Virus record (IMG/VR): IMGVR_UViG_3300031952_000001
Location: 62,001 to 126,000 of that record
Reading direction: 5' to 3' (one strand)
DNA length: 64,000 nt
In this document: positions 5,478-52,917 of the stretch, piece after piece
Layout: each line of letters starts with the position of its first letter
Position numbering within the stretch: position 1 is the stretch's first letter
Made by a program: the position numbers and the translations under genes
The notes under the pieces: model-generated
The model's database searches: none
Told to the model about the DNA's origin: nothing
The model's input: only the letters and a program-made list of their open reading frames with translations

Positions 5478-6119
5478 ATGGTAGACGTCATCAAGCCGTG
5501 GGCGCGCATCGAGGACGAGTTCGACGGGAACGAGATGCTGAAACGCATCGAGCGCGCGGGGCGCACCTGCTACAAGAGCGAAGACCGAATCACCGAGGAG
5601 AGTGCTCCGGCGTTCGTGAAGAAGATCAAAGCCATGGGGCACGAGTCCGTGCTCGAACACGAGAAGGTCACCGTTCGCATCGTCTGCGACCGCGGTGTCA
5701 CTCACGAGATCGTGCGTCATCGCCTCTGCGCTTTCAGCCAAGAGTCGACGCGGTACTGCGACTACCACAAGGCCGGTGAGATCCAGGTCATCGTTCCATG
5801 TTTCTGGAGAGATCCGAGCGACCCGGCGAAGAAGATCCCGAAAGCACAGGTCTGGTACGATTCCATGCTCGCGGCCGAGAAGGCGTACAACAAGCTACGT
5901 GAGTTAGGAGCATCTCCACAAGAAGCTCGCTCGGTGCTTCCTAACAGCCTCAAGACGGAGATTGTGGTGACGGCCGACCTGCGTGAGTGGCACCACATCT
6001 TCACGCTCCGCACGTCGAAGAAGGCGCACCCGCAGATGCGGGAGATCATGATCCCCCTGCTTGCAGAGTTCAAGAGTCGTATTCCCGTCGTCTTCGACGA
6101 CATCGTGGTGGAGGACTGA
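5478..6119 (+). CDS. thyX: FAD-dependent thymidylate synthase
   Basis: GHESVLEH, HEIVRHRLCAFSQESTRY (RHRx7S), EARSVLPNS, LREWHHIFTLR, AHPQMR. Confidence 0.96.
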   Translation: MVDVIKPWARIEDEFDGNEMLKRIERAGRTCYKSEDRITEESAPAFVKKIKAMGHESVLEHEKVTVRIVCDRGVTHEIVRHRLCAFSQESTRYCDYHKAGEIQVIVPCFWRDPSDPAKKIPKAQVWYDSMLAAEKAYNKLRELGASPQEARSVLPNSLKTEIVVTADLREWHHIFTLRTSKKAHPQMREIMIPLLAEFKSRIPVVFDDIVVED

Positions 6120-27406: not shown

Positions 27407-27432
27407 ACAGCTCGGCCCGCTCGACTTCTATG

Positions 27433-27546
27433 GGGTCCTGCGGTTGGAGACGGCTCCGACGCTGTTCTACCCGCCGTACGCCGCAGGACCCTCACCACAG
27501 ACCTGCCACAAGTTCGTGTATGCTATACACCCACATTACGGGTGGG
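27433..27546 (+). ncRNA. candidate structured RNA or leader
   Basis: Perfect 11-bp stem 27433-27443/27481-27491 plus two further hairpins in a 190-nt intergenic gap. Confidence 0.35.
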
Positions 27547-34408: not shown

Positions 34409-35593
34409 ATGATCCGCACCTGCAAAGTGAAGCTCGGTCGTGCGCCAAAACAGGAGGCGAAGCTCACTTACGTTTTGGGTCTCTGTTGTGACCTCTACAA
34501 CGCAGCTCTCCAGCAGCGACGGGATGCCTGGGCTAAGCAGAAGGTCTCGCTTTCGTACTATGCGCAGACCAAGGAACTCACTCAGCTCCGTGCAGATGAT
34601 GAGGAGTACCGGCGGCTGCCGGCTCAGATGACTCGCATGACGTCACTATACCGCGTAGATAGGGCCTTTCAGGGGTTTTGCGGACGGTGTAGACGCGGTG
34701 AGAATCCCGGCTTCCCTCGGTTCCGCAGCCGAGATCGTTTCTCTACTTTGATGTTCTCTACGCAGGATTGGCGCATCAAGGGCAAGAGCCTGATATTGAA
34801 GAACGATGCAGATCCTATTGTCTTGCAAATGCGTAACACGATTCATCATGAGGGCCAGATCAAAGGTCTTCGTGTTGTCCGAAGTGCAACGCGATGGTGG
34901 GCGCATTTTCTTGTGGATGTAGGCCCTACCCCAGCTGTAAAGAAGTCCGATCACGGCGTCGGGATCGACGTTGGTCTTCGAACTTTCGCGACTCTGTCCG
35001 ACGGTAACGTCGTCGAACATCCGCGGTTCTTGAAGCAGAGCCTGGAGCAGCTGAAGTCGGTCCAGCAGGAGCTGAGCCGGAAGAAGAGGGGCTCCAAGAA
35101 CCGCGCGAAGGCGAAGCTCGTCGTCGCGCGGGTACACGAGAAGATCGCGAATCGTCGTCGAGACTTCGTACATCAGACCGTGTCCTCCTTGGTGAAGAAG
35201 TACGACGGGTTTGCGCTGGAGAAGCTCGACGTTTGCGCCATGACAAGCACGGAGCGCAAAGTCGAGGGTTTGGACAAGAAGCAATCTCGTGGTCTCCGAA
35301 GGGGGATCATGGACTCTGGCTGGTCTCTGTTCGGTGCACACCTGGCCTCCAAAGCGGAAGAAGCTGGGCTGCCGGTTGTGCACGTCGATCCGAAAGGCAC
35401 TTCGCAGAGATGTTCGGCTTGCGGAACCATAGTGCGAAAAACACTTCGGGACCGTGTGCACGAATGCTTTGCCTGTGGTCTCGTGCTGGATCGGGATGAG
35501 AACGCAGCCAGGAACATCTACGACCTGGGGCTCAGGTCGGCGTCCGGAAGCGCAGCAACAGCTAGTTGTGCTGAAGGCGCGGAGGTTCTGTGA
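34409..35593 (+). CDS. tnpB: TnpB RNA-guided endonuclease (IS200/IS605 family), no TnpA
   Basis: LYNAAL, PRFRS, RuvC residues GIDVG, FALEKL and DRDENAARNI, zinc finger CSAC/CFAC. Confidence 0.93.
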   Translation: MIRTCKVKLGRAPKQEAKLTYVLGLCCDLYNAALQQRRDAWAKQKVSLSYYAQTKELTQLRADDEEYRRLPAQMTRMTSLYRVDRAFQGFCGRCRRGENPGFPRFRSRDRFSTLMFSTQDWRIKGKSLILKNDADPIVLQMRNTIHHEGQIKGLRVVRSATRWWAHFLVDVGPTPAVKKSDHGVGIDVGLRTFATLSDGNVVEHPRFLKQSLEQLKSVQQELSRKKRGSKNRAKAKLVVARVHEKIANRRRDFVHQTVSSLVKKYDGFALEKLDVCAMTSTERKVEGLDKKQSRGLRRGIMDSGWSLFGAHLASKAEEAGLPVVHVDPKGTSQRCSACGTIVRKTLRDRVHECFACGLVLDRDENAARNIYDLGLRSASGSAATASCAEGAEVL

Positions 35594-39344: not shown

Positions 39345-39713
39345 GGGCCGGAAAGGTTTCGACAGCGGATGTGACGGTGTTCACTGCGTGTACCGCTTGT
39401 AAGTCAGCGGTTTAAAACGACTTTCAACAGACAAATGCCGATGCAGATGTCATCCCCTTCCCGAAGATGGCCGTTCCGTCGCTCCAGCGAGAGGCGGCTT
39501 AGGGAACGTCGGACGTGCGAGGTGCTCGTAACTCGCACGGCCGGCGCAATTCGAGACGAGCAACCCACGGTTTGACAGGTCGCACCGAGAAGCAGCCTGG
39601 ACCCTGGGAGTGCAGTCGTGCGGCACTCTCTGAGACCTTCAGCGCGACCACACACGTAACGAAGTGAACGCTCGACTCTACTGGACGGGGTTTCGATACC
39701 CCCCGGTCCACCA
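39345..39713 (+). ncRNA. ssrA: tmRNA (transfer-messenger RNA)
   Basis: 5' GGGCCGGAAAGGTTTCGAC; 3' GACGGGGTTTCGATACCCC-CCGGTCC-ACCA; acceptor stem with G3.U wobble; tag ORF 39437-39502 reads ADADVIPFPKMAVPSLQREAA*. Confidence 0.92.
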
Positions 39714-39733: not shown

Positions 39734-40105
39734 ATGTCCTATAAAAACGAAGACGAACAGAGAGCCTATCAGAAGGCATGGGTGAAGAAGCGCAGGGCCG
39801 ACTGGATCAGGTCTCATGGGTTGTGCTCGAAGTGCGGATCTTCTGAGAAGCTGAATGTCCATCATGTGGACAAGAAGCAGAAAGTGGACCACAAAGTGTG
39901 GTCGTGGAGTGAAGTTCGTCGTGAGGAGGAATTGAGCAAGTGCGTGGTTCTTTGCGTTGCATGTCATGCCCGCCTTCATGGAGACGAAGTTCCGGAACCA
40001 CCCCATGGCACGATGATTCGGTACAAGAGCAAACGGCATCCGTGCAGGTGTGTTCTCTGTAGAGAAGCCAATACAGCCTACGAGAGTGTTCGTAGACCTC
40101 GATGA
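39734..40105 (+). CDS. HNH endonuclease
   Basis: CSKC..NVHHVD..CVVLCVACHARLH; AT-richer DNA. Confidence 0.85.
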   Translation: MSYKNEDEQRAYQKAWVKKRRADWIRSHGLCSKCGSSEKLNVHHVDKKQKVDHKVWSWSEVRREEELSKCVVLCVACHARLHGDEVPEPPHGTMIRYKSKRHPCRCVLCREANTAYESVRRPR

Positions 40106-40192
40106 TTTCGTTGTTGGCAGCAGCAGGTCAAAGGCTCGGTAACGTCGTGCGCTCACAGGACGGGTCAAGAAGGGACGCACGGGACCAATCAT

Positions 40193-40264
40193 TGCGGGGT
40201 GGTCAAGTGGCAAGACACCAGGTTCATACCCTGGAGACCGTGGGTTCGAATCCCATCCCCGCTA
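40193..40264 (+). tRNA. tRNA-Met (CAT), 1:72 mismatch
   Basis: Anticodon arm CCAGG-TTCATAC-CCTGG; T arm GTGGG-TTCGAAT-CCCAT; CCA not encoded. Confidence 0.9.
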
Positions 40265-40267
40265 CTA

Positions 40268-40415
40268 GGCCGACCAGTCCGAGGGGTGAGGTTGTGCAGT
40301 TCCGTCTCACTGCACAGGGTGACCGGTTTCCGGGAACCCGTGGAAGAGGGGCTCTGGGTCCAGAGTGAACGGATGTGACCTGGGTATGCCGTGTAGGGCT
40401 GGTTGGCCTTTTTTT
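40268..40415 (+). ncRNA. unassigned structured RNA closed by a 13-bp stem and followed by a T-tract
   Basis: GGCCGACCAGTCC (40268-40280) pairs with GGGCTGGTTGGCC (40396-40408); three internal hairpins. Confidence 0.55.
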
Positions 40416-40433: not shown

Positions 40434-41045
40434 ATGGTGCATTCTCTACGAGAACAGGCCGTCACCCTTCGAGAGAAGGGTCTTTCTTATTCCGAGATAA
40501 GAGATCGTCTAGGCATCGCAAGAAGTACCCTTAGCTACATGCTGAAAGATATTGTTCTTACGGAAAAACAGAAGAAACGATTAGAAAAGAAGAAGAAAGA
40601 CGGACAGAAAGTTTTGCGGGCTTGGTCCGAGACTCAACCTCCAGAGGTCCTAGCAGCTGTTAGCTCCCGTGGAGGGAAAGTGTGCCAGGAGCGTCATTCG
40701 GAGGCTCTTCGTAAGCACTTGTCCTTGGGTTGGAAGGCTGCCATGCTGACTTATCGAAAGGATGAGCTGCCTATTAAAATTTCTTTAGAAAAAATCTATA
40801 ATAGAGTTTTTTCCAAAGAACTGATAGGTAGGCGGGCCATAGACTTCGCATGTAAAGATCTTCTTATAGAACACACATCAGACCCCACCCACGGAGTGTT
40901 TGATCTCGTTAGGAGGTTTGAAGACGTTGTTTCTGATCCTCGCAAGAAGATAGCCTATCTGGATGTTTCCAAAATAGGTCCTTCTACTAGGAAACGGTTG
41001 GAGAACCTCGGCGTCCTGGTTTTAGATTTTCGGGCACTGGCCTAA
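40434..41045 (+). CDS. HTH plus PD-(D/E)xK-like putative homing endonuclease
   Basis: LREKGLSYSEIRDRLGIARSTLS; IDFACKDLLIE; AT-rich; stop codon lies inside tRNA-Pro. Confidence 0.5.
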   Translation: MVHSLREQAVTLREKGLSYSEIRDRLGIARSTLSYMLKDIVLTEKQKKRLEKKKKDGQKVLRAWSETQPPEVLAAVSSRGGKVCQERHSEALRKHLSLGWKAAMLTYRKDELPIKISLEKIYNRVFSKELIGRRAIDFACKDLLIEHTSDPTHGVFDLVRRFEDVVSDPRKKIAYLDVSKIGPSTRKRLENLGVLVLDFRALA

Positions 41046-41104
41046 CCTGGTAAGGCACATGCTTTGGGTGCATGGGATTCAGGGTTCAAATCCCTGGTGT
41101 CCGA
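41031..41104 (+). tRNA. tRNA-Pro (TGG)
   Basis: Acceptor CGGGCAC/GTGTCCG; anticodon arm CATGC-TTTGGGT-GCATG; T arm CAGGG-TTCAAAT-CCCTG. Confidence 0.93.
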
Positions 41105-41422: not shown

Positions 41423-41896
41423 ATGAGCTACGAAGGGTACATAGTCTACTACTGCGAGAACGGCCACAAGGTCGACATCAGGGACTGCTACGAAGGGGGC
41501 GACGAGGATCTTGTCTGTGAGGTCTGTGGATCGAAGGAGATGGTTAGGGACCACGTCGATCAGACGAACGGCTGCTGCTGCTCGCAGATTCCCGAGAAGT
41601 TCCGTCCGTGTCCTTGCCACGAGAAGGACCTGAAGCAGCTCGGGTGGGACTCGTTCGAGTGCAACTACTGCAAAGGGGGTGGTATTGCAGAGCGCATCAT
41701 TCACTACTACCCTGAGGACTGCGAGTGCAAGGGTGGGGATCCTGCGTGTCGCAAGTGCCACGGCACGGGGCAGAAGCACGAGCCCTCTACTTGGGATAAC
41801 ACTACGCACTGTACGCCTTGTAGGGGCACAGGGAAGCTCTGGGAAGAGCGTTACGACATCACCCCTCTGAGGAGAGGGAAGAAGGACACGAGGTAG
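41423..41896 (+). CDS. protein with DnaJ-type CxxCxGxG zinc-finger repeats
   Basis: CNYCKGGG, CRKCHGTG, CTPCRGTG. Confidence 0.65.
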   Translation: MSYEGYIVYYCENGHKVDIRDCYEGGDEDLVCEVCGSKEMVRDHVDQTNGCCCSQIPEKFRPCPCHEKDLKQLGWDSFECNYCKGGGIAERIIHYYPEDCECKGGDPACRKCHGTGQKHEPSTWDNTTHCTPCRGTGKLWEERYDITPLRRGKKDTR

Positions 41897-41899
41897 ACC

Positions 41900-42370
41900 A
41901 TGGAGAAGAATCAGCGTCAGTGCGACATCCTGAACACCCAGACGGGCAAGTGGGAGCCGGCGGAGTTCGAGGCCATCAAGAGGGGGTCGGTCTTCCGGCT
42001 GTTCGATCCCCCCGGTCCCGGGCGCGTCGAGTTCGGCGTTCCGAACCTCGCGCTCGCGGACGCCACGAAGACCTCCGAGGGGGTCGGCACCGTGAACTGC
42101 GAGCAGCTCAACTGGACGGGGGATGACTCCCCCACGCCTGTCGACTTCGCCACGGTCATCCGTGAGCTGAAGGCGTTCCCGGGGAAGAAGTTCCGCAGGG
42201 CCGGCTGGAACGGCAAGGGTATGTGGATCGCCCTCCAGAAGCCGGACGTGAACTCGAAGATGACCCTGCCGTACATCTTCATGAAGACCGCCCAAGGCGA
42301 TCTCGTTCCGTGGCTCGCCAGCCAGACGGACATGCTCGGAGAGGACTACGAAGAGGTCATCGAGCCCTAG
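41900..42370 (+). CDS. DUF2829 / Tad2-like anti-defence sponge domain fused to an unknown N-terminal domain
   Basis: DFATVI..GKKFRRAGWNGKGMWI..PYIFMKTAQGDLVPWLASQTDMLGEDY. Confidence 0.75.
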   Translation: MEKNQRQCDILNTQTGKWEPAEFEAIKRGSVFRLFDPPGPGRVEFGVPNLALADATKTSEGVGTVNCEQLNWTGDDSPTPVDFATVIRELKAFPGKKFRRAGWNGKGMWIALQKPDVNSKMTLPYIFMKTAQGDLVPWLASQTDMLGEDYEEVIEP

Positions 42371-52755: not shown

Positions 52756-52917
52756 CTGAACGGAGCGCAGAGACATCACGCTCCAACAGGACCAGGGCAC
52801 CTGTTCAGAATGCCCTAAGGGCTTCGGCCCTGTCACTGAGGAGGCCGGAATAGTCACCCGGCCACTACCCTCGGCCCCTGGCGGTGTTCTCCTTGTCGCC
52901 GCCGGGGGCCATTTTTA
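52756..52917 (+). ncRNA. unassigned ~160-nt structured RNA with a possible pseudoknot and its own terminator
   Basis: Five helices, a C(UUCG)G tetraloop, no ORF between promoter and terminator. Confidence 0.6.

What the first reader, a model, noticed from the sequence alone, without database searches (positions are those of the whole stretch)
40268..40415. Unassigned 141-nt multibranch RNA directly behind tRNA-Met
Seen: 13-bp closing stem with two G.U pairs, then T7; internal hairpins TGTGCAG/CTGCACA, GGGT..CCGG-TTT-CCGG..ACCC and CTCTG/CAGAG; a possible loop pairing TCCGT/ACGGA. It begins 3 nt after the tRNA, so tRNA processing would release it. I do not recognise it as SRP, 6S, Y or tRNA-Sec RNA.
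Basis: seen in the sequence. Interest (0 to 1): 0.7.

Follow-up and report, generated by a model that had tools for sequence, protein, structure and literature searches.

The report
Orphan structured RNA beside phage tRNAs
A 141-base, tightly folded RNA gene of no known family sits between the tmRNA and tRNA genes of a 212-kb sediment phage and its relatives; it appears real and its fold is kept in evolution, but its expression is untested and its job is unknown.

Summary
Window 40268-40408 forms a 13-bp closing stem, with two G.U pairs, around a multibranch core and is followed by T7. It matches no Rfam 15 family and is not a tRNA.

The window lies in a complete 212-kb phage whose only RNA genes are a tmRNA, tRNA-Met, tRNA-Pro and this element, "X".

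- **Identical copies:** X is 141/141 identical in related sediment phages whose tmRNA is only 63-93% identical. There it lies tmRNA - X - 10 nt - tRNA-Pro, with no tRNA-Met.
- **Second allele:** a 205-kb phage (G001) carries a 75%-identical copy at the same position.
- **Fold kept:** 33 of 35 window-predicted pairs are kept in G001 (26.8 expected, P about 0.003), with three two-sided compensatory changes. All five indel columns are unpaired and break any reading frame.
the closing stem and hairpins A and B are supported. Hairpin C is not; a GGGC/GUCC hairpin replaces it.

Best reading: an orphan stable RNA cut from the tmRNA/tRNA transcript by tRNA-processing enzymes, analogous in placement to T4 species 1 and 2 RNAs. 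An invariant 5' strand carrying GUCCGA hints at Y-RNA-like protein docking, but neither phage encodes Ro60. Expression could not be tested.

The parts
39345..39713 (+). Phage tmRNA (tag ADADVIPFPKMAVPSLQREAA). It is the first gene of the RNA island that contains X.
   Evidence: ARAGORN; Rfam RF00023, 82.3 bits
39734..40105 (+). HNH endonuclease ORF, 123 aa. It is an insertion absent from the L029/L030 relatives. G001 carries a different HNH ORF at the same place.
   Evidence: phrog_4234 E 1.4e-31 and a weak Pfam HNH match; synteny
40106..40192 (+). Spacer conserved with G001. It has no significant structure.
   Evidence: alignment; fold z = +0.27
40193..40265 (+). tRNA-Met (CAU) with a U1xU72 mismatch and no encoded CCA. 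It sits directly 5' of X in this strain only.
   Evidence: absent in L029/L030 and reduced to a 36-nt minihelix in G001
40268..40408 (+). X RNA, 141 nt, the conserved unit.
- Closing stem P1: 40268-80 with 40396-408.
- P2: 40290-93 with 40377-80.
- Hairpin A: 40294-40315.
- Hairpin B: 40317-40339.
- Hairpin C': 40349-40361.
- Possible pseudoknot: 40302-05 with 40369-72.
- Invariant internal loop: GA (40281-82) opposite GUGUA (40391-95).
   Evidence: 141/141 identity in L029/L030, with the identity block ending exactly at P1; CM hit in G001 of 67.9 bits (R1) and 150 bits (R2); pair counts
40409..40415 (+). U-rich tail (T7). Relatives have GTTTTTCTT or TTTTCTTT here. It could be a terminator tail or a single-stranded processing or binding tail.
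   Evidence: the terminator scan finds only a weak local hairpin
40434..41045 (+). ORF with an N-terminal HTH and a C-terminal PD-(D/E)XK-like domain, 203 aa. It is probably a free-standing homing endonuclease that travels with its own tRNA-Pro. It is an insertion relative to L029, L030 and G001.
41031..41104 (+). tRNA-Pro (UGG). In relatives a different tRNA-Pro (64-66% identical) starts 10-12 nt after X.

Best explanation
X is a gene for a small, stable, highly structured non-coding RNA of an undescribed family. It belongs to the RNA-gene island (tmRNA - X - tRNA-Pro) of a lineage of roughly 205-212-kb sediment phages.

**Shown**
- X is a discrete 141-nt unit on the tRNA-sense strand.
- It has a 13-bp closing stem, an irregular second stem, and a four-way junction bearing three hairpins.
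- These helices are kept between two alleles that differ at a quarter of their positions.

**Inferred**
- X is transcribed with the neighbouring tmRNA and tRNA genes.
- RNase P cutting at the 5' end of the downstream tRNA-Pro would free its 3' side.
- RNase Z or RNase E cutting behind the upstream tRNA or tRNA-like helix would free its 5' side.
- The closing stem would protect it from exonucleases, as for T4 species 1 and 2 RNAs.
- It would then act in trans as a protein-binding RNA using a host partner, just as the phage tmRNA must use host SmpB.
- The most likely docking site is the invariant 5' strand of P1 with the adjoining invariant GA/GUGUA internal loop.
- The partner and the biological effect are unknown.
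For: **Context**
- The phage is complete and carries only a tmRNA, tRNA-Met and tRNA-Pro besides X.
- X has the same strand and the same position, between tmRNA and tRNA-Pro, in four genome contexts.

**Conservation**
- X is invariant in seven sediment runs.
- It is 141/141 identical in L029 and L030 while tmRNA identity is 93% and 63% and flanking blocks are 83-97% identical.
- The identity stops exactly at the ends of P1.

**Second allele in G001**
- 74.7% identical; CM score 67.9 bits, E about 1e-10.
- 33 of 35 pairs predicted from the window alone stay canonical, against 26.8 +/- 2.2 expected (P = 0.0025).
- All five indel columns are unpaired.
- Two-sided changes: X28:47 U-A to C-G, X57:65 C-G to A-U, X20:119 U-A to C-G.
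- RNAalifold recovers P1, P2, A and B.

**RNA rather than protein or DNA**
- The indels of 1, 1, 1 and 2 nt rule out a conserved ORF.
- No protein homologue of the overlapping ORF was found.
- G.U pairs and fold energies favour the sense strand.

**Placement precedent**
- T4 has tRNA-Arg, then rnaD (119 nt) 1 nt later, then rnaC (139 nt), with the homing endonuclease segB inside the cluster.

**Reliance on host partners**
- Neither G000 nor G001 encodes SmpB.
Against: - There is no expression evidence; no RNA run was listed.
- Only two distinct alleles exist, so covariation is thin. A nested alternative fold fits about as well by percentage paired.
- The 100% identity across phages with 63%-identical tmRNAs, and the 75% identity against a phage with 91%-identical tmRNA, show cassette exchange. 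The identity therefore cannot be read simply as purifying selection.
- A U-tract directly before tRNA-Pro is awkward if P1 terminates transcription.
- The G001 allele alone folds only modestly better than shuffles (z = -1.8).
- No partner protein is encoded nearby.
Confidence: 0.6

Rival explanations
1. X is a Y-RNA-like tether or decoy. It would bind a host Ro60/Rsr ring protein through the GUCCGA-containing 5' strand of its terminal stem and present its branched module to an effector such as PNPase, redirecting or blocking host RNA surveillance.
For: - The architecture fits: a terminal stem formed by the 5' and 3' ends, a branched module and a 3' U tail.
- X9-15 reads AGUCCGA, against the GGUCCGA contacted by Ro60.
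- Ro60 contacts mainly the 5' strand (PMC4201824). Here X1-15 is invariant between the alleles while the 3' strand of P1 has 4 changes.
- Some phages do encode Y RNAs (PMC4201824).
Against: - X gives no hit to the Rfam Y_RNA or YrlA models, even at E<=10 on X alone.
- It lacks the near-invariant T- and D-arm-like loops of YrlA.
- No TROVE or RtcB gene occurs anywhere in G000 or G001, whereas reported bacterial and phage Y RNAs lie within 4 kb of rsr (PMC4201824).
- A 6-nt motif match is weak evidence.
- The complex prediction was not run by the tool.
Confidence: 0.1
2. X is a purely cis-acting element of the RNA island. It would be a large structured spacer that terminates or attenuates transcription after the tmRNA or tRNA-Met, or that guides or insulates precursor processing. 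It would have no function as a free RNA.
For: - P1 is followed by a U-rich tract in all three contexts.
- X always lies between RNA genes.
- In the window it sits just upstream of the endonuclease ORF's ribosome-binding site.
Against: - A terminator or spacer needs neither 115 nt of internal helices kept by compensatory change nor invariant unpaired blocks such as GUGGAAGAGGG and CGUGUAGG.
- In relatives tRNA-Pro starts 10-12 nt after the U tract and would be silenced by efficient termination.
- The simple terminator scan does not call P1.
Confidence: 0.15
3. X is a ligand- or factor-sensing aptamer whose closing stem plus U tract acts as a conditional terminator, controlling read-through into tRNA-Pro (or, in this strain, the endonuclease ORF).
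For: - A four-way junction with a possible loop-to-strand pseudoknot is a typical aptamer architecture.
- P1 directly abuts the U tract.
Against: - No riboswitch model matches.
- The downstream 'gene' differs between contexts and is a tRNA in most of them.
- No alternative antiterminator pairing is conserved.
Confidence: 0.05
4. X is a DNA-level feature, such as a homing-endonuclease target or recombination cassette, or a MITE-like mobile element bounded by 13-bp inverted repeats.
For: - Homology breaks exactly at the X borders.
- The phylogeny of X is discordant with that of the tmRNA.
- Endonuclease ORFs lie on both sides in the window.
Against: - X is single-copy in both complete genomes, and no target-site duplication is seen.
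- The inverted repeats are imperfect in the way that gives G.U pairs only on the sense strand, and fold energies are strand-asymmetric.
- Internal helices are kept by compensatory changes, which DNA recognition would not require.
Confidence: 0.05

Closest known systems
Phage T4 species 1 and species 2 RNAs (rnaC 139 nt, rnaD 119 nt)
   Same: - They are small stable RNAs of unknown function inside a phage tRNA cluster.
- They start 1-6 nt behind a tRNA or each other, and are similar in size.
- A homing endonuclease gene (segB) lies in the same cluster.
- They are not in Rfam.
   Different: - There is no sequence or structure homology; model R2 finds nothing in the T4 locus.
- T4 rnaC ends in a canonical T-arm, GGGUUCGAAUCCC. 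X has no T-loop.
- X is closed by a 13-bp stem and sits next to a tmRNA.
Y RNAs / bacterial YrlA and Yrn1 (Ro60/Rsr partners)
   Same: - A terminal stem made from the two ends, a branched module, a U-rich 3' end and a size near 80-130 nt.
- A GUCCGA-like motif in the 5' strand (PMC4201824).
   Different: - No CM match.
- No tRNA-like T or D loops.
- No TROVE gene in the phage.
- X is 141 nt.
tRNA-precursor-derived small RNAs (for example the 3'ETS-leuZ type; from my own knowledge)
   Same: They are released from a tRNA transcript by the tRNA-processing nucleases and end in a hairpin plus U tract.
   Different: Those are about 50-nt leftover spacers that act by base pairing. X is a 141-nt multibranch unit kept as a discrete cassette.
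GOLLD and ROOL large ornate RNAs of prophages (from my own knowledge; both are Rfam families)
   Same: They are structured RNAs of unknown function that often lie next to phage tRNA genes.
   Different: They are 4-6 times larger, and neither matches X in the Rfam scans.

Membership tests
Any Rfam 15 family | Covariance-model score at or above the family's gathering score | tested here: not met
   No hit on X at gathering score or at E<=10 in the window, in X alone, or in the G001/L029 copies
tRNA / tRNA-Sec | Cloverleaf with a T-loop and D-loop, recognised by ARAGORN or RF00005 | tested here: not met
   ARAGORN and Rfam call only the tmRNA, tRNA-Met and tRNA-Pro. Relaxed ARAGORN gives only wrap-around artefacts.
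Y RNA / YrlA | Long stem formed by the 5' and 3' ends plus an internal or branched module | tested here: met
   P1 and P2 enclose a four-way junction
Y RNA / YrlA | Ro60 contact motif GGUCCGA (animals, Yrn1) or GNCGAAN0-1G (YrlA) near the 5' end (PMC4201824) | tested here: inconclusive
   X9-15 is AGUCCGA, matching 6 of 7 positions of the animal motif. It does not fit GNCGAA. It is invariant in both alleles.
Y RNA / YrlA | Near-invariant T-arm- and D-arm-like stem-loops (PMC4201824) | tested here: not met
   No UUCGAAU-type loop is present. Loop A is UUCCGUCUCA or ACCGUCUCA. No YrlA CM hit.
Y RNA / YrlA | Encoded within about 4 kb of a TROVE (Ro60/Rsr) gene on the same strand | tested here: not met
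   PF05731 is absent from the whole of G000 and G001, and the control genomes ring correctly
Y RNA / YrlA | Binds Ro60/Rsr | not testable with these tools
   The complex job was not folded
T4 species 1/2 RNA type | Small RNA gene lying directly behind a tRNA in a phage tRNA cluster | tested here: met
   X is 2-3 nt behind tRNA-Met in the window and 10-12 nt before tRNA-Pro in relatives. T4 layout.
T4 species 1/2 RNA type | Homology to rnaC or rnaD | tested here: not met
   R2 finds nothing in T4 locus L062. rnaC has a T-arm that X lacks.
Retron msr-msd RNA | Flanking inverted repeats plus an adjacent reverse transcriptase | tested here: not met
   Inverted repeats are present, but no RVT_1 gene occurs anywhere in G000 or G001
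TnpB omega RNA | Overlaps or abuts the 3' end of tnpB | tested here: not met
   tnpB lies at 34409-35593, 4.7 kb away. No TnpB occurs in the relatives' loci that carry X.
Intrinsic terminator | G+C-rich hairpin immediately followed by a U tract | tested here: inconclusive
   P1 plus T7 fits only if a stem enclosing 115 nt counts. The scan calls just a weak 6-bp local hairpin. The U-rich tract is kept in relatives but is followed at once by tRNA-Pro.

The most novel reading that the evidence does not exclude
X is a phage RNA that is cut out by the host's tRNA-processing enzymes and then captures a host RNA-surveillance or defence protein. The candidate is a Ro60/Rsr-type ring, or another factor that reads the invariant GUCCGA strand and the GA/GUGUA loop. 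This would make X the first Y-RNA-like decoy carried by a phage that does not encode the protein itself. Its two 75%-identical alleles, swapped as exact cassettes within genomes that are otherwise about 90% identical, would be the trace of an arms race.
Probability: 0.1. Interest if true: 0.8.

Novelty: new variant of a known kind. Interest (0 to 1): 0.5.

Why it matters
- Huge phages carry tmRNAs and tRNAs to reshape host translation, and tRNA clusters are now linked to counter-defence.
- Orphan stable RNAs in such clusters have been known since T4 species 1 and 2, but none has a function.
- X is a compact, cleanly bounded example with two natural alleles that already outline its fold. It also has an invariant strand that suggests a docking site.
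- It is therefore a tractable entry point to what these RNAs do.
- It adds a candidate family to RNA databases.
- It shows that single RNA genes are exchanged between related phages as exact cassettes, probably under homing-endonuclease pressure.

Tried and rejected
**Homologue searches that found nothing new**
- tRNA-Met 3' end as an anchor in IMG/VR: 19 loci, none with X.
- Exact 19-mer of X in IMG/VR.
- Single-protein searches with the two flanking ORFs.
- Homologues of the HTH ORF lie in tRNA arrays but carry no X.
- Homologues of the 157-aa ORF and their contigs.
- The 105-aa ORF has no relatives.
- The 'spurious ORF' trick: a protein search with the antisense ORF across X.
- Two conserved-block patterns in IMG/VR found only G001 and one chance hit in a coding region.
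- One pattern in 185,579 species genomes gave 20 chance hits, none passing the CM.
- CMs R1 and R2 over all held loci and five virus records.

**Other tests that led nowhere**
- RNA-run search: none listed.
- Complementarity of the conserved loops to the phage genome: only chance-level 8-mers.
- The motif GTTGGCAGC upstream of X is not a repeated promoter.
- The spacers upstream of X are not significantly structured.
- Ro60-X complex prediction: not folded, so it is no evidence.

**Identities rejected**
- tRNA, tRNA-Sec, SRP, 6S, 5S, riboswitches and ribozymes (Rfam).
- Retron RNA (no reverse transcriptase).
- Omega RNA (not adjacent to tnpB).
- Protein-coding (frameshifting indels).
- MITE (single copy).

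Full report
**What is at the coordinates**

A 13-bp stem pairs 40268-80 with 40396-408. It includes two G.U pairs and encloses 115 nt that can form several hairpins. T7 follows at 40409-15.

ARAGORN and Rfam place a tmRNA at 39345-39713, tRNA-Met(CAU) at 40193-40264/5 and tRNA-Pro(UGG) at 41031-41104, all on the + strand. The element, here called X, therefore begins 2-3 nt behind tRNA-Met.

The 153-nt stretch folds to -71.5 kcal/mol, z = -3.7 against dinucleotide shuffles. A 13-bp long-range stem by itself is not unusual. Nine such stems occur in the window, against about seven expected by my own estimate. The case for X therefore rests on the whole fold and on comparison with relatives.

**What it is not**

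No Rfam 15 family matches X:
- at gathering score;
- at E<=10 in a 2.2-kb stretch;
- at E<=10 with X alone;
- in the homologous copies.

Relaxed ARAGORN gives only artefacts.

**Genomic setting**

The window is bases 62001-126000 of a 211,982-bp IMG/VR virus record rated complete. It comes from sediment metagenomes. The whole phage has only three ARAGORN-detectable RNA genes: the tmRNA, tRNA-Met and tRNA-Pro.

The RNA island also holds:
- an HNH endonuclease ORF at 39734-40105, between the tmRNA and tRNA-Met;
- an ORF at 40434-41045, between X and tRNA-Pro, with an N-terminal HTH.

Nearby lie a Tad2-like ORF and, 4.7 kb upstream, a TnpB gene.

**Relatives with an identical X**

One metagenome scan with a 22-mer of X returned the source contig, a same-strain fragment and two other contigs, L029 and L030.

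- In L029 and L030 the order is tmRNA, about 110 nt of spacer, X, 10 nt, tRNA-Pro. There is no HNH ORF, no tRNA-Met and no HTH ORF, and the tRNA-Pro is a different one.
- X is 141/141 identical. Identity begins one base before the closing stem and ends at its last base.
- Logan contigs from seven sediment runs show the same invariant X in these two kinds of context.
- By contrast, tmRNA identity to the window is 93% for L029 and 63% for L030. Flanking blocks are 83-97% identical.

**A divergent allele**

A degenerate DNA pattern for the tmRNA tag peptide found one further phage, G001 (205,564 bp, terminal repeats, complete).

- A covariance model built from X hit G001 once, at 67.9 bits and E about 1e-10. 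The hit lies between its tmRNA and its tRNA-Pro.
- This copy is 136 nt and 74.7% identical to X, with five indel columns of 1, 1, 1 and 2 nt.
- Its tmRNA is 91% identical to the window's, and its flanks are 83-98% identical.
- The phylogeny of X is therefore discordant with its surroundings in both directions. X is exchanged among these phages as a cassette.
- In G001 a different HNH ORF precedes a spacer homologous to window 40106-40192. The tRNA-Met position is occupied by a 36-nt acceptor/T-loop-like minihelix that ends 2 nt before X.

**Structure from the two alleles**

I took only helices predictable from the window sequence: P1, P2, hairpin A, hairpin B and a GGGC/GUCC hairpin C'.

- 33 of 35 pairs remain canonical in G001. 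The expectation is 26.8 +/- 2.2 if the same number and spectrum of substitutions fall at random (P = 0.0025). Conditioning on the number of substitutions in paired columns gives P = 0.004.
- All indels fall in unpaired columns.
- Two-sided changes are X28:47 U-A to C-G in hairpin A, X57:65 C-G to A-U in hairpin B, and X20:119 U-A to C-G.
- The tandem G.A/A.G of hairpin B becomes G-C/U-A.
- Several G.U pairs become Watson-Crick pairs and vice versa.
- RNAalifold independently returns P1, P2, A and B.
- The loop-A-to-strand pairing (CCGU with ACGG/GCGG) stays possible, with one U-A changing to U.G.
- A fully nested alternative fits about as well by percentage paired, but it loses pairs to the indels. 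The inner topology is therefore not settled.
- The sense strand folds 10-19 kcal/mol better than the antisense strand in both alleles.
- The frameshifting indels, and the empty protein search with the overlapping ORF, exclude a coding function.

**Conserved unpaired blocks**

Invariant between the alleles:
- X1-15, which is the whole 5' strand of P1 plus GA. The 3' strand has four changes.
- CCGUCUCA in loop A.
- GUGGAAGAGGG between hairpins B and C'.
- CGUGUAGG opposite the GA.

X9-15 reads AGUCCGA. According to PMC4201824, Ro60 contacts GGUCCGA, mainly on the 5' strand of Y RNAs. Bacterial and phage YrlA RNAs carry near-invariant T- and D-like arms and lie within 4 kb of rsr.

X fails the last two criteria. 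It has no such loops and no CM hit, and neither phage has a TROVE or RtcB gene. The Y-RNA reading is therefore a minority rival. The attempted Ro60-X complex prediction was not folded and counts for nothing.

**Other partners excluded**

Neither phage has a reverse transcriptase, which argues against a retron RNA. Neither has SmpB, so the phage tmRNA must already rely on a host protein. The relatives' loci that carry X contain no TnpB.

**Most likely mechanism**

*Shown:* X is a discrete, strand-specific, structurally constrained unit in an RNA-gene island.

*Inferred:*
- Co-transcription with the tmRNA and tRNA genes.
- 3' release by RNase P cutting at tRNA-Pro, 10-12 nt downstream in three of four contexts. 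In the window's own arrangement, 3' release would be by termination at T7.
- 5' release by tRNA 3'-end processing behind tRNA-Met or the G001 minihelix.
- Stabilisation by the closing stem.
- Action in trans through a host protein.

The nearest precedent in layout is T4. There rnaD (119 nt) and rnaC (139 nt) follow tRNA-Arg at 1-6-nt spacing, and segB sits inside the cluster. There is no homology, and rnaC carries a true T-arm.

**Why the borders are so sharp**

The ORF downstream of X has homologues (40-53% identity) that abut a tRNA-Pro(UGG) in all eight loci recovered from other phage tRNA arrays.
- Its C-terminal half has a conserved D...E-x-T block.
- Its AlphaFold model (pLDDT 87) best matches PD-(D/E)XK nucleases, at weak scores.

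With HNH genes upstream, X lies between homing-endonuclease-type insertions. This would explain cassette-like replacement of its neighbours and of X itself.

**Limits**

- Only two alleles are known.
- There are no expression data; none was listed.
- The host is unknown and no partner has been identified.
- Pattern scans can only find near relatives. All further searches were empty or gave chance hits.

**Verdict**

X is a real, conserved, structured RNA gene of an undescribed family in a phage tmRNA/tRNA island. Its function is unknown. Confidence in the processed-stable-RNA reading is about 0.6. Interest is moderate (0.5).

Noticed in passing
window 40434-41045; loci L021-L028: An ORF family with an N-terminal HTH and a C-terminal PD-(D/E)XK-like domain. 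In 8 of 8 loci it abuts a tRNA-Pro(UGG) inside phage tRNA arrays, often overlapping its first 15 nt. It is probably an undescribed free-standing homing endonuclease tied to tRNA-Pro.
   Followed up: partly
window 40193-40265; L039 1637-1672 (-): The phage tRNA-Met(CAU) has a U1xU72 mismatch at the top of the acceptor stem and no encoded CCA. In phage G001 the same position holds a 36-nt acceptor/T-loop-like minihelix, apparently an internally deleted tRNA.
   Followed up: partly
window 39345-39713: Phage tmRNA with the unusual tag ADADVIPFPKMAVPSLQREAA. Relatives carry ...QRAA, and a 63%-identical tmRNA has ANEAEVIPFPTMAVPSLQKAA. Neither complete phage has SmpB.
   Followed up: partly
window 34409-35593: A TnpB (IS605 OrfB / Cas12f-like) gene inside the phage (Pfam E 1e-29; phrog_506 E 1.6e-86). 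Its own guide RNA was not looked for.
   Followed up: no
window 41423-42370: A Cys-rich 157-aa protein (CxxC repeats; weak Anti-TRAP / DnaJ zinc-finger names in relatives) followed by a Tad2-like (Thoeris anti-defence) ORF. Both are conserved just downstream of the RNA island.
   Followed up: partly
L034 about 5480-5790: In a 158-kb relative, a tRNA-Leu-like gene appears to be split by about 250 nt of structured sequence after the anticodon region. It looks like a group I intron, and ARAGORN did not call it.
   Followed up: no
L021 423-797: An RRM_1-domain protein is encoded beside a 33-tRNA array in a distant phage that carries the HTH-nuclease ORF.
   Followed up: no
window 52873-52910 and 27432-27492: Two other perfect 13-bp hairpins. 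The first is followed by ATTTTTAT and looks like an ordinary terminator.
   Followed up: no
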